Positions 1 to 61,453 of a DNA stretch of 64,000 nucleotides are shown piece by piece (the stretch's first letter is position 1; each line of letters starts with the position of its first letter). Under the pieces are notes generated by a model that saw only the letters and a list, made by a program, of their open reading frames with translations, was not told where the DNA came from and did no database searches. Source of the stretch: Octopus sinensis (Eukaryota); assembly GCF_006345805.1 (NCBI RefSeq), contig NC_042998.1, forward strand, positions 185,690,001 through 185,754,000. The letters run 5' to 3'. Position numbers and translations under genes: made by a program.

Positions 1-1421
1 TGCCAGTGTCATTCCTCTGTTCAAGAAGGGCGACCGCACATCACCTGTCAACTATCGCCCAGTCAGTCTCACTAGCTGTATTGCAAAACTGATGGAATCG
101 TGTGTCAGAGAAACACTTTGGAACTTCTGGAGCTCACACAGTCTCATCCGACCCTCACAATATGGATTTGTCCCTAACTCCAGCTGCAGTGATCAGCTTG
201 TCGAGTTCCTTGAGGACATTACTCAGATCACTGACAGTGGCTCATGGGTGGATGTTGTCTACCTTGACTTTGCTAAGGCTTTCAACTCTGTGCCACACAA
301 AAGGCTTATGGTGAAACTCTCTGCAATGGGTGTGGGGGATGACCTTTTTAACTGGTTGAAATCCTTCATTCTCAACCGAAAGGAGGTAGTCACAGTTCTA
401 GGACAGCATTCTACACCATATGAGATGACATCGGGTGTACCACAGGGATCTGTCCTTGGTCCCCTCTTGTTTGTGGCATACATTAATGACATAGATGCAA
501 ATTTAAAGAATGCCACAGTATTAAAATATGCAGACGACATCAAGCTGTACCTTGAAATCAAGAGGACAGATCCTGTTGTCTACAGCTCTTTCCTGCAATC
601 AGACCTGGACACAATGCAGCAATGGATCACAGACTGGCTAACTGAAACTGGCTGTGGACAAGTGTACCACCATGCATTTTGGGAGAAAAAACCCTGCGTC
701 CACATACTCCCTCCACAACACTGATATCAAGAAATCCTCTTGCGAGCGTGACCTAGGCATCACTGTCAGCAGTGATTTGCGTTGGACAAAGCATATCTCT
801 AAAATTGTCAAGAAGGCCGAGGGTGTCTTGGCATCACTCAGCAAGACTTTTGTTAGCCGCTCTCCAGCCATCTATTTAAAACTGTATACAGCTATGGTAC
901 GACCACACTTGGAATTCGCATCATCAGTTTGGAACCCCTATCTTGCTCAGAACATTGACCTCCTGGAATCTGTTCAGAGACGTGCAACAAAACGCATACC
1001 CTCCATCAGACACCTACCATATTCTGAGCGCCTTGTTTCCTGGGCATGGATTCACTGAAGCTCCGGCGTCTGGCGACGGACTTGGTAAACGCCCACAAAG
1101 TTGTCAACCACCACCTCACCAATAACAACACTGAACACCTTTTTGATCTCCATGTGTCTAACACACGTGGACATGCCTACAAAGTCAGAAAACAACACAG
1201 CTCCCATGACTTTCGGAAACATTTCTTCACACTCAGAGTTGCTGAAGCATGGAATAAACTGCCTGCGTCAGTTGTTGACTGCCATGACTCTGCATCCTTT
1301 AAGGCCCTCATGCTTTCCGAAATCCGTCGAAACTACACCTGATTATATATACACTTTCGATGAGTTGTAGTGCACCTGAGCACTGTACACAATGTTTATT
1401 ATTATTATTATTATTATTATT
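1..1421 (+). mobile_element. CR1/L2-like LINE, 3' part of ORF2 (RT) with 3' UTR and (TTA)n tail; two frameshifts; runs off the window's 5' edge
   Basis: Motifs NYRPVSLTS, VYLDFAKAFNSVPH, GVPQGSVLGPLLF and YADD, plus a CR1-type C-terminus (FFTLRVAEAWNKLP). These are spread over ORFs 92-724, 654-1058 and 1046-1342. The tail lies at ~1395-1421. Confidence 0.9.
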
Positions 1422-1911: not shown

Positions 1912-2850
1912 AGTCTGTCTGCTTGTCGGTCTGTCTGAAAGTCTTTAAATACACTTAAGACTGTCTTACCTTTTGCTCCAAATAGAGCTGCGTAGCATGG
2001 TTTATTACAGTAAGGCTTGCCTTCGTGCTAAAATGAAAATAGAAATAAAAATAAGATTAAATAAACAAAAAAACAACGACAAAAAACAAAAAGTAGACGT
2101 TCCCTTTATGCAAAGCTACGTTTCCTTTTGACAGAGCTACTGTAACTTTATAGAATTGTAACAAAACGAAAGTACAATTAGAACTGTGATGTTGAAATTG
2201 CAGTCAAAAGGCAACAACATTGTATACAGAAAAGATGTAGTGTAAAACAAAGACTGTGAATTCTTCGTTTGTATGCAATAAATACATTACGGGAATTCAC
2301 TGCATTTAGACTCTTGTAGGAAAATGTTGCCCTTAGTAGCTAAAAGTTTGGGTAAACATGGCATATATTGTAGAGAACTAATTCAGAACTGTTTTATGTT
2401 TTTAAATTTAAATACTGCAGGGACCGAGTTAAATTTGCTTCCAAAGAACATGGTACTAATATTAATAAATATAATGTACTTGAGCCGATTCATTTGATTT
2501 TACTATACCTTCCTCCTTTTTAAATCATACGTATCAAATCATACAAATTAAAGGTGAACATCTTAATTCACTTTTCGAAAAATAGTTTTCTTCCTTGCAG
2601 AAATGTTTGAGGGGTGTATCTCGAGATTTGAAAGCATCAAGAAGATTTCAGTTGAATTATGAAACATATAGATGCATATCATTATACCATAGTTGTACAT
2701 GAAATGGTAATAGGAAGTTGTACAGTAAGGTTTATTACATTTTATTAGTTATTCATCACTGAAACTAAGTATCTTTTTGTTAATCAAAACTGGAACGATT
2801 TGTTTGAATTGGTTTGACTAAAACTAAACCGCGAATATTTTTATCTGATT

Positions 2851-4335
2851 TTAAAAAATCAGAGTCTTCTCATTTTCTTCTTCTAGCTTCAGAAGGTTAT
2901 ATTTTTTCTCATCAGAAATGCATTCAGTCAAGTGTTCATCATAATCATTGTTGTCTGATAACTTGCAATCTTCATGAATGCCGGTAGCAACAAGCACTGC
3001 ACAATTCAATGTCTCGTGGAATTCCTTTCCTGAAAAGTTATTATTTTGATGTAATTCCTCTATCGAAGGTGGTGAAGAACGTCTTGGTTGAAAGAAACTT
3101 TTAGTTGGACTAGAACTGAAACCTTCTCTTAAAGTACCATCAGACCGATCGATCTTCATATTTGTTGTATTTGAAGAGGATGATGTGGAATAGTGAACGT
3201 CTGGTTCAGCAGTAGCACTCGCCAGAGGTTCGGTGTCTGTAAAATGATGTTGTGAAAATTTCGAGGGTGAAGACCTTTGAAATTCCAGAAGTTGTTGCAG
3301 GTTAGTTTGAAAATCCGGAATTGCATTATATTGTAAAGAACGCTCATTGTGATGATATTTCGTTGTATCGGAATCTTGTATATACGTTTGAGAGTTAATA
3401 GATGGTTCAGCAAATAATTTAATTGGTGGTATATGATTTCTATAAGCAATCTGCCTTTCATTGTTTTTGTCAATGACGTCATTTTCTCCTCCACCTTTTA
3501 CATTAAGTTCTTTTTCAAACCATTGATTAAATGCTTCATCAAAAGGAAATTCTTTCTGGAACATTTTCGAAGAAGGCCCTTTTTGTGGATCAAGCTTATA
3601 ACTTGTTGAATTGGTTGGGTATTCTGTACAGTGACTACTTTCAAGCATTGCTTCTAAAGCTTCAAATTCCCTTAATGACACGTTTGAAATAGATTCCAGT
3701 TTTAATTCCTCTTCCTCTTCATCTTGGAAAAGGTGTGTGATTTGATTGCGAACTTGTTCGGAACCTTTAGGAGGATTATCCTCTGAAATCTGATATAAGA
3801 AATAGTCAATGGATGGTTCATTTGAAGAAAAATCACCCATAACAGATTCTAATTTTTTAGTTTTCTTAGCAAATTCGGGTCTACTTTGTAGGTCTGAAGT
3901 TACTGAAGCTTCCGCAACTTTTTTTACATCACCTGAATTATTTTGTGGATTATTTGAGGAAACATTTGACACATCAGAATAAAGAGAAACATTTATTTCG
4001 AAAAATATTTTAATCCAGCAAGTAAAGGTTAGCAATGCCCTCTGACTACATGCAATAAGTTGTTCGACTGGAATCACTTTATCCACTTTTAATACATAAA
4101 ATGCGTTCTGAAGTAGTTTATAATTGGGTAGACATCCCGACGGAGAAGGATCTAATTTGATTTTCTTCCCTGCGATTATTCCTGGGTGAATTAAATTAAT
4201 AAGCCGACAATAGGCTGCACCGTTTGACAGGTTGTTGATATCATAAAAATTTGTGCGAAGTTTGCTATTTACCCAAGTTAAGAGGCTTTTTCGACCACAT
4301 TCTGGAACGCGTTTCGGAATTTTCAAACGGTTCAT
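2851..4335 (-). CDS. Intronless 494-aa protein: N-terminal EB1/MAPRE-type calponin-homology domain plus a long Ser/Glu/Asn-rich tail
   Basis: The ORF is uninterrupted. The first ATG is at 4335 (MNRLKIPK); the track's start at 4365 is a TTG. The segment LLTWVN..NLSNGAAYCRLINLIHPG..KKIK..NYKLLQNAF..VDKVIPVEQL..WIKIFFEIN aligns by eye to the EB1 CH domain. AATAAA occurs on the minus strand at 2731-2736 and 2741-2746. Confidence 0.8.
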   Translation of the reverse strand: MNRLKIPKRVPECGRKSLLTWVNSKLRTNFYDINNLSNGAAYCRLINLIHPGIIAGKKIKLDPSPSGCLPNYKLLQNAFYVLKVDKVIPVEQLIACSQRALLTFTCWIKIFFEINVSLYSDVSNVSSNNPQNNSGDVKKVAEASVTSDLQSRPEFAKKTKKLESVMGDFSSNEPSIDYFLYQISEDNPPKGSEQVRNQITHLFQDEEEEELKLESISNVSLREFEALEAMLESSHCTEYPTNSTSYKLDPQKGPSSKMFQKEFPFDEAFNQWFEKELNVKGGGENDVIDKNNERQIAYRNHIPPIKLFAEPSINSQTYIQDSDTTKYHHNERSLQYNAIPDFQTNLQQLLEFQRSSPSKFSQHHFTDTEPLASATAEPDVHYSTSSSSNTTNMKIDRSDGTLREGFSSSPTKSFFQPRRSSPPSIEELHQNNNFSGKEFHETLNCAVLVATGIHEDCKLSDNNDYDEHLTECISDEKKYNLLKLEEENEKTLIF

Positions 4336-5039
4336 TCTTTTGTTTAATGAAGCTAAAATATTCAATTCCTTACTTTATTTCTTTTTCTTCCCTGTCATCC
4401 ACTCATTCTTTATTCTTTCTTTTTCTCACCGTCTTTCCTTATACTTTCCCTTATTCTTTTGGTTTCAATTTTTAAATATTTATTTATGACGTAAACGTAT
4501 TCTCGTTCTTCCTTAGATTTTCTCTTTTCGTCTATTTAGATCTTTATTTGCAGTACAATGTATTTATGCATTGGTTCTTGATTATTCCCGAAAAATGTTG
4601 GTCTTTTCTGTTATTGTCACCGTTTTTTAACTTTTGAAATTAAGTGGAAATTTCAAATTTGGTATATAGATGTAAATTTTCACGTTGAATCTGATTTTGA
4701 TTTTTACTAGTTCCAGGAAAATTTTTTAAAAATGTTCCAGAGGTTTAAAATTTGATAATTTTTTTTTACCCAATCAGAAAACAGGATTTGGAAGCTGGCA
4801 TTTTGTGCGTGATAGCTGTTTATGACAACATTACGACGACCAACATGTAAGAAGTTTTGAATTTTTAATAGATTTTAATGAATAAAGTTATGTGAATTGT
4901 TGGAACAGATGATTAAAATAAAAAGAAAATCCTCAGTGAATATTTTTGAGAAAAAATACAAAAATACAAACTACATTAAATTACATAAAACAAACAAAAA
5001 AGAAAAAAGAAAAGAAAACTGTAGTTCATTTCATGTAAG

Positions 5040-5960: not shown

Positions 5961-6144
5961 CTTAAATTTCTGACCGTGTGTCAAAATCAAAAACCATTAT
6001 TTACCCAGAAATTATTCTTTACAAAGCAGTTTTAGACAGTTCTTAAGATTTGGAAATGTCTTCATACCTTGGGAAACTATCGATTATAATAATTCTTTTC
6101 TACTAAAGGCACAAAGTCTGAAACTTGGTGGGAGGGGATAGTCG

Positions 6145-6655
6145 AGTACATGGACCTCAGTGTTTCACTAGCACTTAATTTATTGACCCCGAAAGGATGA
6201 AAGGCAAAATCAACCTCGGCGGAATTTGAACTCAGAACGTAGCGACAGACGAAATGCCTATTTCTTTACTACCCACAAGGGGCTAAACACAGAGAGAACA
6301 AACAAGGACAGACAAACGGATTAAGTCGATTACATCGACCCCAGTGCGTAACTGGTACTTATTTAATCGACCCCGAAAGGATGAAAGGCAAAGTCGACCT
6401 CGGCGGAATTTGAACTCAGAACGTAGTGACAGACGAAATACCTATTTCTTTACTACCCACAAGGGGCTAAACACAGAAAGGACAAACAAAGACAGACAAA
6501 CGGATTAAGTCGATTACATTGACCCCAGTGCGTAACTGGTACTTATTTAATCGACTCCGAAAGGATGAAAAGCAAAGTCGACCTCGGCGGAATTTGAACT
6601 CAGAACGTAGCGGCAGACGAAAAACCGCTAAGTATTTCGCTCGGCGTGCCACAAC
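6145..6655 (-). mobile_element. SINE family A, head-to-tail multimer (about 3 units)
   Basis: Repeated units joined by the junction aaagaaatag|g(t/c)atttcgtctg, read on the minus strand. Confidence 0.85.
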
Positions 6656-9575: not shown

Positions 9576-10289
9576 TATATATATATATATATATAGATAG
9601 ATAAACAGATAGACAGGCACATACAGATAACTGCGACCGTCACTCGGAATCAAGGATGACGTTGCCCGTAGTTGCAGGTACCTGCTAAATGTATGTTTGG
9701 TACATACATATATATATGTATATACAGATAATAGAAATACACACGCGCGCACACACCGTTGGTTACACGTACATAACAGAAAGAAAATATGTGACCTAGT
9801 TCGCATGTCCTTTAACGATACTCTGAAAATAAGATTAAAATGTTGAGTTACCATCAATGGTATTGACTTTAAGCACTTGAAGTTGTAATACTCATGCCTT
9901 TCTTAAGTCTGTAGCTGAGTAAGTGAAACAGACATAGACGAGAATCGAACCTGGATTGCAAATCAAGGAAGTTTGAGTAATTGAATCAATGATCCATTCT
10001 TACCTCAGCATGGCTTCCACAAGTGAGTGTTTTACCACATTTCTCACATTTCAAGCAAGGTCTGTGCCAATCTTTTCCCATTGAAGAAACTTTCTCGGCT
10101 GGAAAAGAGACAAAACGAAATAAAAATGAAATTTAACAACATAAAAATGGAGAATAATAAAATTTTCGGAGCTATATTTATGTATGTTCTGATGAAACCG
10201 AACCACTGCATTTTTCTTCGTCTTACAATTATCTTCCCCTCTCTCTAATCAACGCAGATCAGTTGGTCCGATAGCCCTTCCTTAAAATG

Positions 10290-15112: not shown

Positions 15113-15589
15113 ATGTAGGTTTAAGTGGCAGCAATCTTTATAAATAAGGCAAACGATAACGAATGCTTTAGGATAATTTTAGTTCTATTGTTAAAATAGA
15201 GATTGTTTACCTTGCAGGAAAACTAAACAAATTAAGCACATAGACCGATGCTCGCCTTCTGTTATCATTCCACTAACTTTTAACATTAATATTACAAGTA
15301 TAACAAGTAGCCCATACTATGCTGGTTAAGTCGGCTGCCTCATTCGATCTTATGAAATACAGTACCAGTTGTTTTATTAATAACGTATTTTGGTGTCAGT
15401 TATTCACTGTGACACCTTCATATTTTTTCTTTCATTTGTTTTAGTCTTGTACTGCAGCCATGCTGGTGCACCACCTCGAAGTGTATAATCGAACAAATCG
15501 ATCCGCCACCCCGATACGTATGTAAGTCCTTCAGGTGCATGGAGGAATAACTTTTTGCAGGCTGGGTGACAAAGCGTTTTCAACGAAAA

Positions 15590-16186
15590 AGAGTGAAATG
15601 AGTTGGCGAGAATGGAGGGAAGAGCAGATGTCAACTCGGGATTTGCGGTTGCTTTTGGACAATTCATGAGGCACCATTTTCCACGTTTAGGAACCTTTCC
15701 AAGTTGTTGAAGATAACGATGAACAGTTGTATGGTTTGAATTAAGCTTTATTGCCAATTCTTCAACTGATAATGCAGCATTTTCTTCAAGTAATGCCTCG
15801 AGGAGCTTATCATCAAACTCAACTGGACGTACAAGGCTGAAATCTCCACTTCTGGATTTTGCAAACCATCTTCTGCAAGTTCTTTCATTCAAACATTCTT
15901 TCCCATAAACTGAGTGTATGTTTCGAGTCGTTTCGACTGCAGAGTTTCCATTTTTGTACTCATAAAGCATTATGAACCTCAAATGCTCTTTGGATACTTC
16001 CATGTTAGAAAGGGTTTTAATCAAAGAAATTTTAATTCTATTATTCTGTAAAATAATATTTAATTAATTTAAATGTACACAAATGCATAAAAATAATTTT
16101 TAATTCCATTAGACATTCTAAAATACTATTAAAATTCATTCAATTTTAAGAAAGGTAAAATCGGACAGAACTTATGGGATGAACTG

Positions 16187-19894: not shown

Positions 19895-20268
<374 letters not shown>

Positions 20269-20360: not shown

Positions 20361-22874
20361 GACTGGATTATACAAACTGAAGGATCCTACCAAAATTTAC
20401 AACAACAAGCATGGGAAGACATCACAATAGCAGACCTAAGAAAGGCACTCACGAAGGCCCATAATTGGAAACCCCCCGGTAAAGATAGGGTGCCGAATTT
20501 CTGGCTCGCATCGCTCCCATGCGCACACGGTAAGCTAGTTCAGCTGCTCAATGGAATTATGACAGACCCAAAGAAAACACCTGAATGGTTAGCAAGTGGT
20601 ATTACTTACCTACTCCCAAAGAATAACGAAACCAACCTTCCAAAAAACTATCAGCCTATAACCTGTCTATCCACCACGTATAAAATCCTAACATCTATCC
20701 TGGCGGAGAAAACATATGCATTCATGGAGAAGAACGATATTTTCCCCATTGAACAAAAAGGGTGCCGCCGAGGCTCATGCGGATGCAAAGATCAACTGCT
20801 AATTAATCGTATGATCCTTGAGAACTGTCACAACAAGTGCAGAAATCTCAGCTCCGCATGGATTGACTATAAAAAGGCCTTCGACAGTATACCGCATTCA
20901 TGGATCTTGAGATCGCTGGACATCTTCAAAATTTCCCCTGTGATTTCAAGCTTCCTGAAGCACAATATGTCGCTGTGGAATACGAATCTCCAATTATACC
21001 ACTCTAATAGAGTACTTGCCTCAGAAAATATAAACATCAACTGTGGAATTTTTCAAGGTGACTCACTTTCACCTTTAATATTCTGCATAACCCTAATACC
21101 CCTTACAAGTGAATTTAACAGAACAGGGTATGGGTATAAAATTGCCAATAAAAAAATAAGCCATCTATTTTATATGGATGACTTAAAACTCTGTGGTAAA
21201 GACAATAATGAACTTGAAGGCCTATTGCGCACTGTGAAAGCATTCAGCGATGACATCGGGATGGAGTTTGGACTTGAGAAGTGTGCCAAGGTCACTTTCC
21301 AGAAAGGGAAAGTGAAGACCACAAATTCAATCGTGTTAGATGTTGACACAGTCATAAGAGAGCTTGAGCAAGAACAAACATACAAATATTTAGGGATAAA
21401 TGAAGGCTCTGGTATTCAGCATGCAAGCATGAAAGAGAAGATCAGGAAGGAATGTTATAGGAGAAATCTGAACTAAATGCACGTAACAAGGTGTTAGCTA
21501 TAAATTCCTTAGCAGTTCCAGTTGTTACTTATAGCTACAATGTGTTGAACTGGAATATGAGTGAAGTAAAGAATATAGATAGGAAAATACGCAAGCTACT
21601 GAGTTGTAATAGGATGCACCACCCAAAGGCAGACAAGGAGGTTGAGGCCTGATCCAATTTGAACTAGCTTACAAAACAACCACAATTGGACTGGCCAAAT
21701 ATCTTGAAATAACGAATGACTGGATGCTAAAGCTCGTGGAAAATCACGGGAGACGAAATAAGATTCATTCTATCATAAAGGAAAGCAAAAAATTTGCTAT
21801 TGATCTCGTGCAGGATACCCAGATTGAACAACCCGAGGGAAGTACGGCAACTATTGTTGCAAAGAAGGTGAAAATAATGGCAACGAAAAAAGCGCACGAG
21901 CAATTGGCTGATAGGTGGGAGGAGAAACCTCTGCACGGCAAATATGTGGTCCGCAGCAAACAAGCTGATGTTGACCAGAAGTAAACCCATCAGTGGCTAC
22001 GGAGCTCAGGGCTAAAAGCAGAGAGCGAAGGTTTCATCCTGGCTGCTCAAGATCAAAGCCTATTAACCCGGAACTACCAGGCCAATGTGATGCAAAATGG
22101 AGCAGACCCAAAATGCCGATTCTGCAACGACATGATTGAAACAGTGGACCACCTAATCTCTGGATGTAAAGTCTTAGCACCAGAGGATGTATAAATTAAG
22201 ACATTACAGAGTTGGCCAATATCTACACTGGCTAATAAGTGGGCATTACAATATCAAAACTGCCGACAAGTGGTATAATCACCACCCTGAAGCTGTAACT
22301 GAAGGAGAAAATGTAACGATTCTGTGGGACTTTCCAGTACATACAGACCGAACCATCAAAGCCAATAAACCAGATATTGTTGTGAAAGACCAAAACAATA
22401 AAGTTTGCTTATTGATCGACATGAGCATCCCCTGTGATCATAATATCTCGGCGAAAGAGTTTGACAAGCTCAGAAAATATAAAGACCTACTCATTGAAAT
22501 TGAGAAAATGTGGCATCTCAAGGCGGTTACAATACCAGTGATCGTAGGAGCACTAGGAATGATCAAGAAGGGAACCGAAAATTATATGAGAATGATCCCT
22601 GGCTTACCATCCCTGCAAGAAGTGCAAAAGATTGTCTTAACTGGTACATCACACGTATTGAGAAGAGCATTGTCGATGTGAGAATTATTACTACCCATGT
22701 ATTTTAATTTAATTAAAAAAAAAAAAAATGAACGAACTATTGAGTTTAGTTTAATGGCCTACCAATGTATACTATGAGTTTCTATGCCCTAGGAGTCGGG
22801 AAGATACCCGGCTAGAAATGGAAGCAAATTTGAAAGAAGAAAAACAAATAATGATAATAATAATAATAATAATA

Positions 22875-26113: not shown

Positions 26114-26682
26114 GTATGTATGTATGTGTATGTATGTATGTATGTATGTGTGTGTGAGTGTGTGTGTGTTTACACACACGCACAGACAATACAATCAAGC
26201 GCGCACACTCACACACACGCACGTCAACCACTGCCATAACTATAAACACAATCAGTGAATTTCTTTTCGAGACAAATAAAATATCATTTAAATGCAAAAT
26301 AAAAGTATCTTACCAAAATAGACTTCCTTTTGGCATTTCGGACACTTGGGCATGTTGACAGATTTTTGTTATATTAGATGCGATAGAAAATATAATAAAT
26401 GTAGGAGATAAGTATTGCTACTGACTGTAAAAGGAGAAATCCTCGCTATATGAAAGCAGAATTTCGAGTAGTTAGGTCGCTATCAAGTCCAAACAGTCAT
26501 TGACAGATGACACACCTACGCTGTTTACGAAACTGGTCTATGAGAACGGATGATATAACAAATCTACCGTGCATAATACACGCTGATTTGGATATGAGCT
26601 AGTTGATCGATCGTTGCGTGCAGTTCTTCCATCTTTTAACCTTTTGCTTTTTCCAGTCATTAGAGTGCAGCCATACTGACTG

Positions 26683-26894
26683 TGTATGTGTGTGTGTATG
26701 TATGTATGTATGTATGTATGTATGTATGTATGTATGTATGTATGTATGTATGTATGTATATATTATGTATGTATGTATGTATATATTATGTATGTATGTA
26801 TGCATGTATTATGTATGTATGTATGTATGTATGCATGTATTATGTATGTATGTATGTATGTAGTATGTATGTATGTATGTATTATGTATGTATG

Positions 26895-26928
<34 letters not shown>

Positions 26929-27468
26929 TGTATGTATGTATTATGTATGTGTGTATGTATGCATGCATTTATGCATGTATGTATGTATGTATGTATGTAT
27001 GTATATGTATGTATATGTATGTATGTATTATGTATGTATGTATGTATGTATGTATGTATTATGTATGTATGTACGTATGTATGTATGTATGCATGTATTA
27101 TGTATGTGTGTATGTATGCATGTATTTATGCATGTATGTATGTATGTATGTATGTATATGTGTATGTATGTATTATGTATGTATGTATGTATGTATGTAT
27201 GTATGTATGTATATATGTATGTATGCATTATGTATGTATGTATGCATGTATGTATGTATGTGTGTGTATGTATGTATTTATGTATGTATGTATTTATGTA
27301 TGTATGTACTATGTATGTATGTATGTGTGTATGTATGTATATATGAATGTATGTATGTATTACGTATGTAGTATGTATGTATGTATGTATTACGTATGTA
27401 TTATGTATGTATGTATGTATTACGTATGTATTATGTATGTATGTATGTATATATGTATGTATATATAT
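26683..27468. repeat. About 780-bp degenerate (TATG)n array
   Basis: Tetramer array with TAT, TACG and TGCA interruptions. Similar arrays at 51074-51375 and 54720-55030. Confidence 0.95.
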
Positions 27469-45086: not shown

Positions 45087-45679
45087 GAGTGAGAGAGCAG
45101 TTCATGCCATCAAAGTGACACTGGGGTAAAATATACGAGCCCATTATACCCATCATGACTACCCGTCTGATAAAGGTACACCAGGCACATGCATCACAAC
45201 CTACGTGCGCGACATGGTGATCTCATATCAAGATAAACAGCACATGACCTTGCAGGTGGGGCCCAGTTAGAATTTTCTTTAGGTTGTAGTACCCATCCCA
45301 CTCAAACCGTCCCTGAATAAGGTTGTTTAAGGATGTTGAAAGAACCACCCATGTTTCCAGAGGGTGAACTATTCAAACCCCAAATAATCCCTCTCAACAC
45401 ATGGCTATGAGCTCCCCCCCCACTACTTCTGCTCGTGATCAGAGATGCACATATCGTCAGCCACTAGGGACATGCTCACTGGTTAAGGTCAAACAACTGA
45501 CAAGCAAATCTGTGATATTGAGCAGAATATTTGCTGTAGCCCATCTTTATACCAAGACAAAACATAACATGATACATGATAACACTTCAATCAGTTAAGA
45601 TCAGAAGCCATGAGAGCCACTCCTGCCTGGTACTGCATCAGGGCATCTATTATTATTATTATTATTATTATAGTTTATT

Positions 45680-45711
<32 letters not shown>

Positions 45712-45719
45712 CATTACTG

Positions 45720-45788
<69 letters not shown>

Positions 45789-45818
45789 ATAATAATAATA
45801 ATAATAATAACAGTAATG

Positions 45819-45865
<47 letters not shown>

Positions 45866-45878
45866 CAACAACAACAAC

Positions 45879-45933
<55 letters not shown>

Positions 45934-47908: not shown

Positions 47909-47997
<89 letters not shown>

Positions 47998-48480
47998 CAT
48001 ATATATATATATATATGACATATATATATATATATATATATATGTGACATATATATATATATATATATATGACATATATATATATATATATATATATATG
48101 ACATAATATATATATATATGACATATATAATATACTATATATATATATATAATATATATATATATGCATATACGTGTATGTGTGTGTGCGTGTGTGTGTG
48201 TGCATGTCACGAGCCACCAGACGGAAAGAGCTTGCAAAAGAGTGGAAGGTAGAGATCTGTAAATGGGAGGAAGAGAAAGTGAGAGAGAGAGAGAGGGGGG
48301 AACAAGAAGAGAGAGAGAGAGAGAGGGGGAACAAGAAGAGAGAGAGAGAGAGGGGGAACAAGAAGAGAGAGAGAGAGAGAGAAGAAAGAGAAGGAGTCAG
48401 AGAGAAGGAGAGAGAGAAGGGTGAAAGAAGGAGGAGAAAAAACAAACAAACTGAGAAAGGGACCATAGCTGCTAGCCAAG
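47690..48480. repeat. (GA)n-rich tracts, a (TA)n array with periodic GAC interruptions, and three copies of a ~28-nt GA-rich unit at 48285-48375
   Basis: Read directly. Confidence 0.9.
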
Positions 48481-50657: not shown

Positions 50658-51122
50658 TGTATTAGGGTCAATGTTCGTTCTGATAGAATAATTTCTGTTT
50701 CGCTCTACAAAATCCAGTGTTTGATACTTGTTACAGTCTGGTGACGGACTTAATTATGTTTTGTCAATTGCTTACACGCATTCCCAGTTTTCCCATTTTG
50801 TTCACTTTACTTTTTCGTTTATTTCCTTTGATTTTTTTTCTTTTCTTTCAAGTGTAACCAGTAAGAATATTCCTCTCTGTAGTTTAGCAAATCATCAGTA
50901 TTTTATAAGAATGAACATTTTTGGACCAGTCCGACTTGGAATGAACCTTGTTAGTAGTGTATACGTATGTATGTTATCCTTTTAGTTTTAATTATTTGAC
51001 ATCTTCCTGTGAAACATCTGGTTTCTAACAAAGAAACAAAACTCCTATCGTTAGAATCAACATAGATCATTAGTGTATGTATGTATGTATGTATGTATGT
51101 ATGTATGTATGTATGTATGTAC

Positions 51123-51153
<31 letters not shown>

Positions 51154-51174
51154 TGTATGTATGTATGTATGTAC

Positions 51175-51205
<31 letters not shown>

Positions 51206-51258
51206 TGTATGTATGTATGTATTTATCTATGTACATATGTATGTATGTATGTATGTAC

Positions 51259-51289
<31 letters not shown>

Positions 51290-51389
51290 TGTATGTATGT
51301 ATGCATGTATGTGTGTATGTGTTTATGTATGTATATATGTATGTATGTATGGAATGTATTTATGTATGTATGGAATGTAATGTAATGAA

Positions 51390-54208: not shown

Positions 54209-55388
54209 ATTATCCCTTTTGAGGTATTTGAGAGTGATTTAGGTTAGATCCCACTGATGTTTCTACTACGTTGAGCGACTGCACTCGGGCGCCCTTTTCT
54301 GGTGTTTATGCATTGTTGTCAATAAGCATTAAAAATGAAAGTTTCGAACAACATTCTTTAACAAACATATCAAATTGAACACAATAGTTCTCGGGTCAAT
54401 CACGTAAGTGCTGGATCTGATTCCTACTACTTAGCAGAGTAACCACTTGAAAAAACCGGAACTGTAAACGTTCTATACACGCACAAGTATATATACATAT
54501 ATATATATATTATATATATATATATATTATATATATATATAGGCGGTGCTCCAGCATGACCGCAGTCAAATGACTGAAACAAGTAAAAGATAAAAGAATA
54601 TATATTATGTATATATATATTATATGTATGTATATATATTATATATATATATATTATATATATATATACAATATATATAATACATATATACATACACATA
54701 CATACATATATATGAACATGCTTACACACATGCATGCATGCATCCATCCATCCATCCATCCATACATCCATCCATCCATACATACTACATACATACATAC
54801 ATACATACATACGTACGTACGTACATACATACTACATACATACATACATACATACATACAGGCATAAATACATACATACATACATACATACATACATACA
54901 TACATACATACAGGCATACATACATACATACGTACGTACATACATACATATATACATACATACATACATACATACATACATACATACATACATACATACA
55001 TACAGGCATAAATACATATACATACATGCAAACATACTTTTAGGCAAGCACTGTAAAGGAGAGATAAGATTTCGATTTTTGTCATCATTCACATACCGGC
55101 GCCCTTGGTCAATGTGCTAAAAACATGATAGACGGTTTGTGTTCCGTCGTTCTATTATTGACACTTATGTTTTTCATGTTGAGCACAGAATTAAAACATT
55201 TCTGTGTTTAGTAATAGCTGGGAAAAGTAGTCTCCTTATCCCCTACGGTTTAAGGTAAAATGTTTTCAGCTAGTGCTTAGCAACTTCACAGAGTTAAGGA
55301 ACATCTCATAAATGCCTATTTCCTCGACTGAATCGGCAATAAGTAAAGCACTGTGTATTTATTGATCAATGTATGGAATAGCTTCAAA

Positions 55389-56518
55389 GGCGGCGAGCTG
55401 GCAGAAACGTTAGCACACCGGGTGAAATACTTAGCGGTATTTCTTCTGCCGCTACGTTCTGAGTTCAAATTCCGCCGAGGTCGACTTTGCCTTTCATCCT
55501 TTCAGGATCGATAAATTAAGTACCAGTTACACACTGGGGTCGATATAATCGACTTAATCCGTTTGTCTGTCCTTGTTTGTCCCCTCTGTGTTTAGCCCTT
55601 TGTGGGTAGTAAAGAAATAGGTATTTCGTCTGTCTTTACGTTCTGAGTTCAAATTCCGCCGAGGTCGACTTTGCTTTTCATCCTTTCAGGGTCGATAAAT
55701 TAAGTACCAGTTACGCACTGGGGTCGATGTAATCGACTTAATCCGTTTGTCTTTCCTTGTTTGTCCTCTCTGTGTTTAGCCCCTTGTGGGTAGTAAAGAA
55801 ATAGGTATTTCGTCTGTCTTTACGTTCTGAGTTCAAATTCCGCCGAGGTCGACTTTGCCTTTCATCCTTTTGGGGTCGATAAATTAAGTACCAGTTACTA
55901 GGGTCGATATAATTGACTTAATCCGTTTGTCTGTCCTTGTTTGTCCTCTCTGTGTTTAGCCCCTTGTGGGTAGTAAAGAAATAGGTATTTCGTCTGCCGT
56001 TACTTTCTGAGTTCAAATTCCGCCGAGGTCGACTTTGCCTTTCATCCTTTCGAGGTCGATAAATTAAGTACCAGTTACGCACTGGGGTCGATATAATCGA
56101 CTTAATCCGTTTGTCTGTCGCTACGTTCTGAGTTCAAATTCCGCCGAGGTCGACTTTTCCTTTCATCCTTTCGGGGTCGATAAATTAAGTACCAGGTACT
56201 GGGGTCTATATAATCGACTTAATCCGTTTGTCTGTCGCTACGTTCTGAGTTCAAATTCCGCCGAGGTCGACTTTGCCTTTCATCCTTTCGGGGTCGATAA
56301 ATTAAGTACCAGTTACTGGGGTCGATATAATCGACTTAATCCGTTTGTCTGTCGCTACGTTCTGAGTTCAAATTTCGCCGAGGTCGACTTTGCCTTTCGG
56401 GGTCGATTAAATAAGTACCAGTTACGCACTGGGGTCGATATAATCGACTTAATCCGTTTGTCTGTCTGTCCTTATTTGTACTATCTATGTTTAACCCCCC
56501 TGTGGGCAATAAAGAAAT
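55389..56518 (+). mobile_element. SINE family A, seven-unit head-to-tail array
   Basis: One full-headed unit followed by six units that restart just upstream of the B-box. Confidence 0.9.
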
Positions 56519-59039: not shown

Positions 59040-61453
59040 TGGTGACCCCGTCAAAGAATTGCAGCCTTCCCTTGAACCAGCTTCACCAACTTAATTGCAT
59101 TTGGAAAATAAAGACATCTTTTGTACTGCGGTTAAAATTTTCCATTTCGGCACTGCATTTCGCGATCCCGTCAAAGAATCACAGCTTGCACATCACCCGG
59201 CAATGAAACAGAACTGAAAACTCCTGCGATTGATTGGCTCATAATGGCTCTCCCAGAACAGAACCCAGCGGCAAACACATCCACAGTCGACATGGCATTC
59301 CAAGTGGAGATTATGTTGAGGATTACCCCATTCTAGACGCACGGCCCTACATTATGGTTTCACCATTTACAGGCCCAGTTCTCTTCCAACCGAATAGTGA
59401 GCGATGCGTCCTGACTAACGCATCTGATCGGTTCCTTATCGCCAGAGATCACGAACGTGGTCCCTGATCTCATTATGGCACAACCAGGTTCTGTGTCATA
59501 CGACACTTTCAAAAACCACGCTAATCACTAGAACTTCAGAGTCCCAACAAAAGTGACTTCACCAGCTCCTTACATAGGAAGAATTGGGCGATAGAACGCC
59601 TTCCCGGCTTCTACGCAGAATGAAACCGCTTCTTGGAGATGAGATCCTCCCCGAAAAAATTTTTAAGCAGCTTTTTCTCCAGCGTCTGCCCTCCAGCACG
59701 CAGGTGGTCTTCGCTTCCACTCGAGAGTCTACTTCCATTGAGGAACTGGCGGAGCTAGCTGACAAAATAGCCGAGGTACCACACACGTATTCAACGATAT
59801 CGACGGTAACGCCAGCCGTTCCTCCTACAAATCCTTCTGCGAGTTCTTCCTAATTTTCGGACTTGCGCTCATTAATGATGCAGCAAGCAGCGCAGATACA
59901 GGCCTTCACAACTCAGATACAGGCCCTATCGCCTGATACACCGTGTCGAAGCAACAGCCGATCGTGTCATTTTGGTGAACGTTCCCGAAACCCGAGTGCT
60001 ACCCGCAGCTCGCATGAGACGTGTTGGTACCACCAAAAGTTCGGAACACGGGCACAGAAATGCACGATCCCATGCTCGTTTTTCAGCATCCAGTTCGGGA
60101 AACGACACAGCCAGGAATTGAACGTGACGGAAGTTCCTGGCTCTCACCCAAAAAGTCGCCTGTTTTTCGTTTGCGATCGGGTAACAGGCACACGTTTCCT
60201 TGTTGACACCGGCGCGCAAGTCAGCATAATCCCTGTTTCCAACACTTCAGGAAAAAGAAAAGAGACACCAGTCTGTCTTCAGGCAGTTAACCACTCACCC
60301 ATTCCAACCTACAGTGAACAATTCCTAACGTTGAACGTCGGACTACGCCGCCCCTTCCATTGGGTATTTGTCATAGCTAAACTGCCGATTTTCTGCATCA
60401 TTTCGGTCTCCTGGTAGACATTACACACAGGAGACTTGTCGACAGCACCGCACAGCTCACTGTACGCAGTATAGCCGCTCGTATGGCCACAGTCAGCCCA
60501 ACTGTTTTGCTAACAACGATAACTTACCACAGTGCTATCCTGAAAGAATATCCGGACGTCGCTCGACCAGTATCCCATAGGCAGCCGATCAAATACAAAG
60601 TTACCCACCACATCAAAACCAGCGGTACACCCGTTGCTGCAAGACCCAGAAGGTTACCACCAGATCGTCTCAAGGCCGTCAAGCAGGAATTCCAGCACAT
60701 GCTCCACCTTGGAATCATCCGCCCGTCCAGCAGCAACTGGTCCTCTGCGTTCCAAAAAAATCATCGACCGATTGGCGAGTTTGCTGTGATTATCGATCGC
60801 TGTAAGTGATGCATATCCTGTACCCTATCTACAAGACTTTCCTAGCTCGCTGTATGCAGCTCGCATCTTTTTATAGATTGACCGTGTGCGAGCATACAAC
60901 CAAATCCCCGTGGAACTTGCGGACATCCCGAATATAGTAGTTATGACACACTTCGGAATGTTTGAATTCCTGCGTATGCATTTCGGTTTACGCAACGCGG
61001 CACAGACATTCGATACGGTTACCAGATGTTTGCCTTTCGTCTATGTTTACATAGACGACATTCTCGTGACCAGTAGCTCAGACAAAGAACATGATCAACA
61101 TTTGCACCTGCTATTCGAACGCCTGCGCGAATACGGTATTTTTATCAACCCCCAGCAAGTGTTCGTTCGGAGTTGCTTCCCTTCATTTTCTCGGGCACAT
61201 TCGTCCTCTTCCCGAGAAAGTCAAGGCCATCGTGGATTCTCCACCATCCACATCTCTCCGCAAATTAAGAGAGTTTCTCGGTTTAGTGAATTTTTATAGG
61301 AGATTTTTACCCCACTTCGCTGATACAGCACAACCGCTCACGGATTTGCTACGGCGGCGAACATGCAAAAACACGAATATTGCCCTTAGTGAAGATCAAC
61401 TTGCTTCTTTCGCCTCCCTGAAAAAAGCGTTCTCCAACGCTAGCATGTTGGTG
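59040..61453 (+). mobile_element. Ty3/gypsy internal region (PBS, gag, protease, RT), frameshifted and truncated before RNase H
   Basis: PBS TGGTGACCCCG at 59040-59050 after ..TACA; LFLQRLP; CWYHQKFG..AQKCTIPC knuckle; FLVDTGAQVSII; FGLRNAAQTF; VYIDDILV; FLGLVNFYRRF. Confidence 0.9.

What the first reader, a model, noticed from the sequence alone, without database searches (positions are those of the whole stretch)
2851..4335. Intact intronless EB1-like CH-domain gene that appears to lack the EB dimerisation domain
Seen: a 494-codon open frame in a window where every TE ORF is broken, with poly(A) signals about 110 nt downstream. Known: EB1/MAPRE proteins pair this CH domain with a short linker, an EBH coiled coil and an EEY/F tail. 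Here the CH domain is followed by about 380 aa of Ser/Glu-rich, probably disordered sequence ending EEENEKTLIF, with no recognisable EBH. Inference: a retrocopy-derived, neofunctionalised microtubule binder (possibly a monomeric plus-end tracker or germline-specific).
Basis: partly seen in the sequence, partly recalled or inferred. Interest (0 to 1): 0.7.

Follow-up and report, generated by a model that had tools for sequence, protein, structure and literature searches.

The report
Octopus EB-like microtubule-binding gene without dimerisation domain
This is a real, selectively maintained, intronless octopus gene that sits inside an intron of a CRIP-like gene and encodes an EB1-type microtubule-binding domain fused to a long acidic disordered tail; it belongs to a small divergent clade that has lost the EB partner-docking domain and changed the residue EB proteins use to recognise growing microtubule tips.

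Summary
Window 2851-4335 (minus strand) is an intact 494-codon ORF in Octopus sinensis. Residues ~8-120 are an EB1/EB3-type CH domain. Residues 121-494 are acidic and mostly disordered, with no EBH domain, no EEY tail and no match to any known domain.

It is a real gene, not a decaying copy. Orthologues exist in O. bimaculoides (89% identity), in an unnamed relative (80%) and in a much more distant lineage (CH ~52%). In that lineage the gene sits in the same sense-nested position, between exons 2 and 3 of a CRIP-like LIM gene. dN/dS is below 1 throughout (CH 0.04-0.34, tail 0.36-0.66), and all CDS indels are in frame.

With tandem-CH paralogues (including one from Argonauta) it forms a monophyletic, intronless clade far from canonical EBs. 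All eight CH domains replace the near-universal tip-sensing Gln (EB1 Q102) with Arg/Lys and carry extra positive charge.

The "retrocopy" reading is plausible but unproven: no parent affinity, poly(A) relic or target-site duplications, and an old origin. "Plus-end tracker" is disfavoured. I infer a lattice-binding adaptor analogous to Drosophila Mst27D. Expression, oligomeric state and microtubule binding are untested.

The parts
2851..4335 (-). Complete single-exon CDS, 494 codons plus TAA stop, encoding the EB-like CH protein (P0001; Octopus sinensis GCA_006345805.1, chromosome CM016860.1).
   Evidence: The ORF is intact in orthologues P0002 and P0003. dN/dS is 0.60 against L001, and the only two CDS indels are 3 nt each.
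3976..4314 (-). EB-type calponin-homology domain (residues ~8-120).
   Evidence: Pfam CH E=1.3e-8. EB1/EB3 CH in PDB at E~1e-17. AlphaFold2 pLDDT 96-98. Foldseek places it on EB1/EB3 CH at E~3e-8, rmsd 1.1 A over 105 columns, while other CH types score E>=1e-2.
4288..4317 (-). Clade-specific N-terminal motif PKRVPECGRK (consensus PKR[VIF]xxCGRKxLxxW) that precedes every CH domain of the clade.
   Evidence: Alignment of eight clade CH domains: P7, K8, R9, C13 and K16 are invariant. Canonical EBs have no such motif.
4030..4050 (-). Altered tubulin-H3-contact segment, residues 96-102 (CSQRALL). It is the equivalent of EB1 G99-F105 (GKFQDNF). Q102 becomes R99, K100 becomes S97 and N104 becomes L101.
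   Evidence: Column-by-column comparison of 148 canonical EB CH domains with 8 clade domains. The functional meaning of Q102/Mal3 Q89 and of K100 comes from PMC3368265, PMC5042579 and PMC10199041.
2854..3975 (-). Acidic Ser/Thr/Asn-rich tail (residues 121-494), predicted mostly disordered with a few short helices.
   Evidence: pI 4.8, 64 D+E against 37 K+R, GRAVY -0.97. pLDDT is below 50 except for helices 221-233, 265-276 and 342-354. No Pfam or PDB match. dN/dS is 0.66 in the octopus pair and 0.36-0.42 in the distant lineage.
3634..3678 (-). Short amphipathic helix SLREFEALEAMLESS (residues 220-234). It is weakly conserved with the distant orthologues (PLNEVQLLKEILAED).
   Evidence: Alignment A5. 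Helix with pLDDT ~68. The similarity is not statistically significant on its own (E=0.69).
2890..2931 (-). C-terminal motif LTECISDEKKYNLL (residues 469-482). It is the only tail segment clearly shared with the distant orthologues (LAECIANGRKYDLV).
   Evidence: BLASTP of tails: 7/14 identical, 12/14 positive, E=0.028. L469, E471, C472, I473, K478 and Y479 are invariant in six sequences.
2731..2746 (-). Two AATAAA poly(A) signals, 105 and 115 nt downstream of the stop.
   Evidence: Signals at similar distances occur in L001 (+111, +125) and L002 (+106).
4336..4803 (-). Conserved 5' flank, the putative promoter and 5' UTR. It includes a CRE-like half-site ACGTCA (window 4487-4492) at -157 and an in-frame TAA at 4375-4377.
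   Evidence: 92% identity to L001, higher than the CDS (89.5%) and the 3' flank (86%). The ACGTCA at -157 is conserved in L001. The distant orthologues carry GA[CT]GTCATGATTTGTGACGT[CA]A about 80-90 nt upstream of their start.
10004..10099 (-). Exon 2 of the host CRIP1-like LIM gene ([32 protein letters not shown]). It is the upstream boundary of the intron that holds the CH gene.
   Evidence: tblastn E=2.6e-15. Splice sites and phase (ends GAG|gtaaga, phase 0). The database gene call records a 76-aa LIM product spanning the locus.
1968..2027 (-). Exon 3 of the host CRIP1-like gene ([20 protein letters not shown]). It is the downstream boundary of the host intron.
   Evidence: tblastn E=9.5e-9. 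ttttag|CAC acceptor. The same arrangement is seen in L005 and L002.
26315..26353 (-). Exon 1 coding part of the host CRIP1-like gene (MPKCPKCQKEVYF).
   Evidence: tblastn E=2.6e-4. ATG context and G|gtaag donor.

Best explanation
SHOWN. Window 2851-4335 (minus strand) is a functional single-exon gene of Octopus sinensis. It is nested in the sense orientation in intron 2 of a CRIP1-like LIM gene. It encodes an EB1/EB3-type CH domain followed by a ~375-aa acidic, largely disordered tail. There is no coiled coil/EBH domain and no EEY/F tail. The gene is under purifying selection. It has positional orthologues in other octopuses and in a much more distant lineage. With tandem-CH paralogues it forms a small monophyletic clade that is far from canonical EBs.

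INFERRED MECHANISM. The CH domain still binds microtubules. The fold, the alpha-tubulin-contact lysines K76 and K89, and K59/K60 are kept, and net positive charge is raised. It no longer reads the GTP-cap state. The conserved Gln (EB1 Q102 / Mal3 Q89) and its neighbours, which contact beta-tubulin helix H3, are replaced by Arg/Lys and hydrophobic residues in every clade member. The protein should therefore decorate the lattice rather than form comets.

Without EBH/EEY it cannot act as a +TIP recruitment hub. I propose instead that short conserved motifs in the tail, chiefly LxECIxxx[KR]KY[ND]L near the C-terminus, bind a partner or mediate self-association. That would make the protein a microtubule-to-partner tether or bundler, functionally analogous to Drosophila Mst27D. 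The acidic tail may also damp or autoinhibit the basic CH domain.

The confidence given (0.55) is for the whole statement. The shown part alone I rate at about 0.9, and the inferred lattice-binding adaptor mechanism at about 0.45.
For: Reality and constraint:
- The ORF is far beyond chance.
- Orthologues P0002 (89%) and P0003 (80%) are intact.
- Against L001, dN/dS is 0.34 for the CH domain and 0.66 for the tail, at dS 0.17.
- The CDS has 2 indels, both 3 nt. The flanks have 11 indels in 1186 nt, mostly frame-shifting.
- Only 0.15% of neutral substitution simulations keep the frame open, and P(no frameshift) is ~1e-5.
- In the distant lineage, CH dN/dS is 0.04-0.14 and tail dN/dS is 0.36-0.42, at dS up to 0.71.

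Orthology and independence from the host gene:
- The same order, CRIP exon 2 - CH ORF - CRIP exon 3 on one strand, is found in L005 and L002.
- The start M-[NS]-R-L-x-[ILV]-P-K-R is conserved, with in-frame stops upstream.
- Joining CRIP exon 2 (phase 0) to the only nearby acceptor gives CTT CAT TAA, an immediate stop.
- The 5' flank is conserved and carries a CRE-like element.

Domain identity.

No EBH.

Clade:
- HMM scores are 137-205 bits within the clade against <=88 bits for canonical EBs.
- NJ monophyly is 98/100, with 25-33% identity to human EB1 against a canonical median of 54%.

Residue logic:
- One search shows which residues are kept and which are replaced.
- Mal3 K63D and K76D weaken binding. 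Q89E abolishes tip tracking. Q89A gives whole-lattice binding (PMC3368265).
- EB1 K100E/Q102E impairs binding (PMC5042579).
- This Gln is described as conserved in EB1s of all eukaryotes (PMC10199041).
- Net charge of the CH core is +5 to +9, against a canonical median of +3.

Precedent: Mst27D is a retroposed, spermatid-specific EB-family protein whose similarity to EB1 is limited to the CH domain. It binds along the microtubule lattice and uses its C-terminus to dimerise and bind Nup358 (PMC10359004). The tandem-CH paralogues P0004 and P0005 fit the idea that the clade needs two CH domains, in cis or by association, once the EB coiled coil is gone.
Against: - There are no expression data. 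The Logan and ENA contigs look genomic because they include host intron and exon sequence.
- Microtubule binding is untested. Several conserved EB surface residues are changed (K34D, E36N/S, K98A/D, K100S/N, N104L/I, E106T), which could abolish binding rather than retune it.
- Drosophila EB1 and Mst27D CH domains alone do not bind microtubules without dimerisation (PMC10359004). No convincing coiled coil is seen here.
- Tail conservation across the deep split is marginal (E=0.028 for one 14-aa motif).
- Octopus-lineage dN/dS of 0.6-0.66 indicates weak constraint on the tail.
- Low pLDDT in the tail may reflect the shallow alignment rather than disorder.
- The AlphaFold CH model was built from an alignment full of EB sequences, so its EB-like fold is not fully independent evidence.
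- The Arg/Lys-for-Gln effect is extrapolated from Ala and Glu mutants.
Confidence: 0.55

Rival explanations
1. It is a canonical-style autonomous plus-end tracker that works as a monomer. The CH domain would still recognise the GTP/GDP-Pi cap, and the acidic tail would merely sharpen tip-versus-lattice discrimination.
For: The CH domain is EB-type and K59/K60, K76 and K89 are kept. An acidic C-terminal region also exists in EB1, where it has an autoinhibitory role (abstract of PMC6023887). That monomeric mammalian EB fragments can track ends is from my own knowledge (Komarova 2009, cited within PMC10359004) and was not checked here.
Against: Q102 becomes R/K, K/R100 becomes S/N, N104 becomes L/I and E106 becomes T or a hydrophobic residue in all eight clade domains. 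Mutating the equivalent Gln removes tip specificity. K100E/Q102E impairs binding. Fly EB1 CH alone does not bind microtubules.
Confidence: 0.12
2. The CH domain has been repurposed away from microtubules. It might bind another filament, nucleic acid or a protein. The EB resemblance would then be historical only.
For: Many canonical EB surface residues at the tubulin interface are changed. The domain and its PKR...GRK extension are very basic. The distant orthologues carry a strongly basic, NLS-like linker, KNKERFRRKERTGKRRKK.
Against: The lysines shown to contact alpha-tubulin are retained, and CH dN/dS is low at 0.04-0.34. In Mst27D a similarly divergent EB-like CH domain still binds microtubules. 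Fold similarity to actin-binding CH types is far weaker than to EB.
Confidence: 0.2
3. The ORF is not an independent gene. It would be an alternative, for example terminal, exon of the host CRIP-like gene, or be expressed only from host read-through transcripts.
For: It has the same strand as the host and lies inside host intron 2 in two deeply diverged lineages. A TTTTAG acceptor-like site lies 17 nt upstream of the ATG.
Against: An in-frame stop lies 12-13 codons upstream in the three lineages checked. Host exon 2 ends in phase 0, so joining it to that acceptor reads CTT CAT TAA. The acceptor-like site is not conserved in L002. The Met start is conserved, as is the upstream CRE-like element. 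The ORF has its own poly(A) signals.
Confidence: 0.08
4. It is a decaying processed pseudogene or a chance-preserved ORF without function.
For: The gene is intronless and surrounded by TE debris. Octopus-lineage tail dN/dS is fairly high at 0.66.
Against: The ORF is intact in at least six sequences from two deep lineages. All CDS indels are in frame while the flanks have many. Neutral simulations almost never keep the frame open. CH dN/dS goes down to 0.04. Synteny is conserved.
Confidence: 0.02

Closest known systems
EB/MAPRE family (EB1, EB2, EB3; Mal3; Bim1)
   Same: The N-terminal CH domain is of the EB type. PDB phmmer gives E~1e-17. Foldseek gives rmsd 1.1 A to EB1/EB3 CH. The structural core and K59/K60, K76 and K89 are conserved.
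   Different: There is no coiled coil/EBH (PF03271) and no EEY/F tail. The H3-contact motif K/R100-F-Q102-D-N104-x-E106 is replaced. Identity to human EB1 CH is 25-33% against a canonical median of 54%. The CH domain is preceded by the clade motif PKRxxxCGRK. The gene is single-exon and nested in a CRIP intron.
Drosophila Mst27D (spermatid-specific EB1-family protein, PMC10359004)
   Same: The architecture and logic match. It has an N-terminal EB-like CH domain, and similarity to EB1 is restricted to that domain. Its unrelated C-terminal region provides partner binding. It reportedly arose by retroposition. It binds along the microtubule lattice rather than as comets.
   Different: This is an independent origin in insects rather than cephalopods. 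No sequence relationship of the tails was tested. Mst27D has a predicted coiled coil and demonstrated dimerisation, and neither is shown here. Its partner (Nup358) and its testis expression are known for Mst27D and unknown here.
Plasmodium EB1 (lattice-binding EB, PMC10199041)
   Same: It is an EB-family member that has lost tip tracking and decorates the whole lattice. This shows that the EB CH scaffold can be retuned.
   Different: Plasmodium EB1 keeps the conserved Gln, the coiled coil and the EB1 domain. Its lattice binding depends on the CH domain together with a microtubule-binding linker. The octopus protein changes the Gln and lacks EBH.
Tandem-CH paralogues of the same clade (P0004 from ENA ERZ21867824; P0005 = Argonauta hians GAB1598528.1)
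   Same: They share the clade-specific CH features: the PKRxxxCGRK motif, R/K at the Q102 position, no EBH, and a single exon.
   Different: They have two CH domains in one chain and no long acidic tail. They are 415-443 aa long. Their loci are different, and no CRIP exon was found in the files I scanned.

Membership tests
EB/MAPRE end-binding protein family | N-terminal EB-type calponin-homology domain | tested here: met
   phmmer against PDB: EB1/EB3 CH at E~1e-17, residues 14-116. Pfam CH E=1.3e-8. Foldseek: EB1/EB3 CH at E~3e-8, rmsd 1.1 A.
EB/MAPRE end-binding protein family | C-terminal coiled coil plus EB-homology domain (Pfam PF03271) | tested here: not met
   No PF03271 hit at E<=10. 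phmmer --max with human EB1 residues 186-268 gives no hit in any of the six clade proteins, while 92 of the 150 sequences in the set (6 clade proteins plus 144 other top hits) have it. No EBH-coding sequence is found in the window.
EB/MAPRE end-binding protein family | Acidic C-terminal EEY/F motif that binds CAP-Gly domains | tested here: not met
   The octopus proteins end ...LEEENEKTLIF. The terminal Phe is present but is not preceded by EE. The distant orthologues end ...EEHVKCQS.
EB/MAPRE end-binding protein family | Conserved beta-tubulin H3 contact residues, including the tip-sensing Gln (EB1 Q102 / Mal3 Q89) | tested here: not met
   In 148 canonical EB CH domains, Q102 is 74% conserved and N104 93%. 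In all eight clade domains Q102 is R/K, N104 is L/I and K/R100 is S/N.
EB/MAPRE end-binding protein family | Autonomous tracking of growing microtubule plus ends | not testable with these tools
   This needs TIRF reconstitution or live imaging.
Processed retrogene (retrocopy) | Absence of the parent gene's introns | tested here: inconclusive
   The CDS is one uninterrupted ORF here and in L001, L002, L003, L005, L006 and L007. The intron structure of an octopus MAPRE parent could not be fetched for comparison.
Processed retrogene (retrocopy) | Poly(A) tract relic and flanking target-site duplications | tested here: not met
   No 15-mer with >=12 A occurs in the 823-nt 3' flank. No direct repeat brackets the gene. 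Both features would be expected to erode in an old insertion.
Processed retrogene (retrocopy) | Identifiable parent gene in the same lineage | tested here: not met
   The nearest canonical EBs are from insects, a tick, Seison and Capsaspora at 32-39% identity, with no molluscan affinity.
Mst27D-like EB-derived microtubule linkers (functional class, not a homology family) | EB-like CH domain plus an unrelated partner-binding or dimerising C-terminus, with lattice binding | tested here: inconclusive
   The architecture matches. Partner binding, dimerisation and lattice binding were not testable. Tail homology to Mst27D was not tested because no sequence was at hand.
Actin-binding or other CH-domain classes (calponin, alpha-actinin, parvin, CAMSAP, NuMA/HOOK) | Best sequence or fold match to those CH types | tested here: not met
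   CAMSAP_CH scores E=0.0064, below the gathering score. Foldseek hits to fimbrin, parvin and actinin CH domains are at E>=1e-2, against 3e-8 for EB.

The most novel reading that the evidence does not exclude
Cephalopods may carry a lineage-restricted clade of EB-derived proteins in which the GTP-cap sensor has been naturally converted into a constitutive lattice binder. The evidence for that conversion is Gln to Arg/Lys at the H3 contact together with extra positive charge. The lost EB coiled coil would be compensated in two ways: by tandem CH duplication in one paralogue, and by a partner-binding or self-associating acidic tail in the other. The tailed member has stayed locked inside the same CRIP intron, possibly since before the octopus-decapodiform split. 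It may build a cephalopod-specific stable microtubule array, for example in the spermatid manchette or in neurons.
Probability: 0.3. Interest if true: 0.6.

Novelty: new variant of a known kind. Interest (0 to 1): 0.4.

Why it matters
EB proteins are the master hubs of microtubule plus ends. Their CH domain is the textbook sensor of tubulin nucleotide state.

A naturally occurring, selectively maintained clade that keeps the EB CH fold but replaces the near-universal sensing Gln and drops the hub domain would be useful in two ways. It would be a ready-made evolutionary experiment on what makes an EB read the GTP cap. It would also be a second, independent example, after Drosophila Mst27D, of an EB CH domain being recycled into a lattice tether.

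The find also gives a clean case of a gene conserved in a sense-nested position inside a host intron over a deep divergence.

It is not a new kind of system. The protein is already present in public annotation as an uncharacterised CH-domain protein.

Tried and rejected
- A word-indexed homologue search with the clade CH alignment (A2) returned only oomycete and unnamed EBs and not even the query. It was uninformative.
- AlphaFold2 with a 5-sequence alignment gave mean pLDDT 31 and was discarded.
- Literature searches for the run and assembly accessions (SRR11869384, SRR9969974, ERR3431203, ERZ21867824) and for UniProt A0A0L8HFJ8 found nothing useful. The species behind P0003, P0006, P0160, P0161 and P0004 therefore remain unnamed.
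- The O. bimaculoides orthologue's DNA was not retrievable. Its dN/dS and synteny could not be computed.
- The tail alone matched nothing in PDB at E<=10 or in Pfam.
- An SxIP motif was sought by eye in the tail and not found.
- A CRIP-CH fusion through the TTTTAG acceptor was rejected on reading phase.
- Retrocopy hallmarks (A-tract, target-site duplications) were searched for and not found.
- tRNA and Rfam scans of the window were empty.
Full report
OBSERVATION

The ORF is real. It lies on the minus strand, with ATG at 4335 and stop at 2853-2851, and has 494 codons. An in-frame TAA lies 13 codons upstream. At the local composition an open frame of this length has a chance probability of about 3e-12 for the whole window.

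Pfam finds one domain, CH (residues 14-104, E=1.3e-8). It finds nothing for the EB1 C-terminal domain even at E<=10. Against PDB sequences the ten best hits are all EB1/EB3 CH domains at E~1e-17, followed by Bim1 and Mal3.

Two AATAAA signals lie 105 and 115 nt after the stop. The tail is acidic, with pI 4.8, 64 D+E, 70 S+T and GRAVY -0.97. Neighbouring TE ORFs are fragments. Only the strand was left unsaid.

SOURCE AND CONTEXT

The protein is identical to a gene product on Octopus sinensis chromosome CM016860.1 (GCA_006345805.1). The database records a 76-aa LIM-domain gene spanning the locus on the same strand.

All three have good splice sites. The CH gene therefore sits in the sense orientation in the ~8-kb intron 2 of a CRIP1-like gene.

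IS IT A LIVE GENE?

Orthologues exist in O. bimaculoides (UniProt A0A0L8HFJ8, 89% identity) and in an unnamed species from a Logan assembly (P0003, 80%). Both are full length.

The Logan contig L001 is collinear with window 2133-4803. Nei-Gojobori estimates against it are as follows:
- dS = 0.17.
- dN/dS = 0.60 overall, 0.34 for the CH domain and 0.66 for the tail.

Indels and flank conservation point the same way:
- The CDS has only two indels, both 3 nt.
- The 1186 nt of flank have eleven indels, most of which would shift the frame.
- The 5' flank is more conserved (92%) than the CDS (89.5%) or the 3' flank (86%).

Simulated neutral substitution at the observed divergence keeps the frame open in 0.15% of trials. 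At the flank indel rate, the chance of no frameshift is ~1e-5.

DEEPER RELATIVES

An exhaustive HMM search of 1.84 billion representative proteins gives three relatives far above the rest, at 137-205 bits. About 1200 ordinary EB proteins follow at <=88 bits.
- P0006 (632 aa) has one CH domain and a long tail.
- P0004 (443 aa) and P0005 (415 aa, Argonauta hians GAB1598528.1) each have two CH domains in tandem.
- A further search adds P0160 (90% to P0006) and P0161 (60%).
- P0161 and the tandem-CH protein P0004 come from the same ENA assembly, so one organism carries both types.

All of these are single uninterrupted ORFs in genomic contigs.

The key point is position. In L005 the order is CRIP exon 2, CH ORF, CRIP exon 3, CRIP exon 4, all on one strand. 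L002 has CRIP exon 3 about 840 nt after the CH stop. The tailed gene is therefore a positional orthologue of the octopus gene, despite only ~52-54% CH identity and an almost unalignable tail.

Within that lineage the constraint is clear:
- P0006 against P0160: CH dN/dS 0.04, tail 0.42.
- P0006 against P0161: CH dN/dS 0.14, tail 0.36, at dS 0.71.

The true start is conserved as M-[NS]-R-L-x-[ILV]-P-K-R, with stops upstream. A CRE-like palindrome pair (GACGTCATGATTTGTGACGTCA) lies ~80-90 nt upstream in L002 and L005. A conserved ACGTCA half-site lies at -157 in the two octopus sequences.

Host exon 2 ends in phase 0. Joining it to the only acceptor-like site upstream of the ATG would read CTT CAT TAA. 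A CRIP-CH fusion is therefore unlikely.

THE CH DOMAIN

With a 150-sequence alignment, AlphaFold2 models residues ~8-120 at pLDDT 96-98. Foldseek superposes the model on EB1/EB3 CH structures at rmsd 1.1 A over 105 columns (E~3e-8). Other CH classes score E>=1e-2. One caveat applies: the alignment is dominated by EB sequences.

I compared 148 canonical EB CH domains with the eight clade domains column by column.
- Kept: the structural core (W23, N25, G41, Y44, C45, N74, L78, Q79, F82, P92, F107, W110, F114, N118; EB1 numbering) and the basic residues K59/K60, K76, K89 and K112.
- Replaced in all clade domains: K34 to D; E36 to N, S, T or Y; K98 to A, D, G or E; K/R100 to S or N; Q102 to R or K; N104 to L or I; E106 to T, V, L, M or I; Q109 to C, S or N. 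Q46 is replaced in seven of the eight (R, H or L).
- Added: a clade-specific N-terminal motif PKR[VIF]xxCGRK.

The net charge of the CH core is +5 to +9, against a canonical median of +3.

The literature gives these positions meaning:
- In Mal3, K63D and K76D (EB1 K76 and K89) weaken binding. Q89E (EB1 Q102) abolishes tip tracking. Q89A binds the whole lattice more strongly (PMC3368265).
- EB1 K100E/Q102E is used as a binding-impaired mutant (PMC5042579).
- The Gln is described as conserved in EB1s of all eukaryotes (PMC10199041).

The clade is monophyletic in a neighbour-joining tree (98/100 bootstraps). Its members are 25-33% identical to human EB1, against a canonical median of 54%. Its nearest canonical EBs are taxonomically scattered. 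No molluscan parent can be identified.

THE TAIL

- It has no Pfam or PDB match.
- No EBH is found by a maximally sensitive phmmer search.
- No EBH-coding sequence exists anywhere in the window.
- pLDDT is below 50 except for short helices at 221-233, 265-276 and 342-354.
- Across the deep split only one motif stands out: LTECISDEKKYNLL against LAECIANGRKYDLV (E=0.028; invariant L, E, C, I, K, Y). A weaker helical segment, SLREFEALEAMLESS, is also shared.
- The C-terminal ...EKTLIF is octopus-specific and is not an EEY/F motif.

INTERPRETATION

Shown: this is a conserved, independent, single-exon gene for an EB-type CH domain plus a disordered acidic tail. It lacks every EB hub feature.

Inferred: the protein is a lattice-binding microtubule tether or bundler rather than a tip tracker. 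The basis is the retained alpha-tubulin contacts, the replaced H3-contact Gln, the raised positive charge, the existence of tandem-CH paralogues, and the precedent of Drosophila Mst27D.

Mst27D is a retroposed, spermatid-specific EB-family protein. Only its CH domain resembles EB1. It decorates microtubules along their length and needs C-terminal dimerisation. It links microtubules to Nup358 (PMC10359004).

It is unsupported by hallmarks, and any such event was ancient. "Monomeric plus-end tracker" is disfavoured. "Germline-specific" is untested.

LIMITS

- There are no expression data.
- The species names of four source samples are unknown.
- dN/dS is pairwise Nei-Gojobori only.
- Tail disorder is inferred from a shallow alignment.
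- The effect of Arg/Lys at the Gln position is extrapolated from Ala and Glu mutants.

VERDICT

This is a genuine and moderately interesting gene. It is a new variant of a known kind: an EB-family CH domain in a non-EB architecture, belonging to a small clade seen only in octopods (Octopus, Argonauta) and four unnamed samples. It is already present as an uncharacterised entry in public annotation. Interest 0.4.

Noticed in passing
window 26315-26353, 10004-10099, 1968-2027 (minus strand): Three coding exons of a CRIP1-like (cysteine-rich LIM) gene. The fourth exon must lie beyond the window start. The CH gene is sense-nested in its intron 2, and this nesting is conserved in loci L005 and L002.
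   Followed up: yes
L003 10001-11332 (P0004); L006 10001-11248 (P0005, Argonauta hians): These are intronless paralogues with two EB-like CH domains in tandem and no tail. Each domain is preceded by the PKRxxxCGRK motif. This may be an in-cis substitute for EB dimerisation.
   Followed up: partly
L002 ~85-110; L005 ~9990-10015; window 4487-4492: A CRE/ATF-like element lies upstream of the CH gene. In the distant orthologues it is GA[CT]GTCATGATTTGTGACGT[CA]A. In the two octopus sequences an ACGTCA half-site lies at -157. In L005 the gene caller started the ORF inside this element, adding 31 spurious N-terminal residues to P0161.
   Followed up: partly
window 6140-6626 and 55436-56466: Tandem arrays of a ~184-nt unit (117-364 nt periods) occur in opposite orientations. 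The unit contains a tRNA B-box-like GAGTTCAAATTCCGCCGAGGTCGAC segment and looks like a tRNA-derived SINE arranged in tandem. ARAGORN calls no tRNA.
   Followed up: no
window 92-1342 (+), 20490-22681 (+), 59863-61299 (+), 15404-16024 (-): Broken transposable-element ORFs are present. Reverse-transcriptase (RVT_1) fragments lie at 92-724, 20490-21476 and 60886-61299. A Mos1/mariner HTH_48 transposase N-terminus lies at 15404-16024.
   Followed up: partly
window 26683-27466, 51074-51372, 54658-55037, 47912-48165, 45648-45932, 20076-20203: Long microsatellites, (TGTA)n of up to 200 copies plus (AT)n and (TTA/TAT)n, generate the spurious Cys/Met/Tyr/Val-rich 'ORFs' in the ORF list.
   Followed up: no
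P0006/P0160/P0161 residues ~130-160 (L002, L007, L005): The distant orthologues have a strongly basic, NLS-like stretch just after the CH domain (KNKERFRRKERTGKRRKK). The octopus proteins lack it and have only AKKTKKLES. Linker charge, and possibly localisation, therefore differ between lineages.
   Followed up: no
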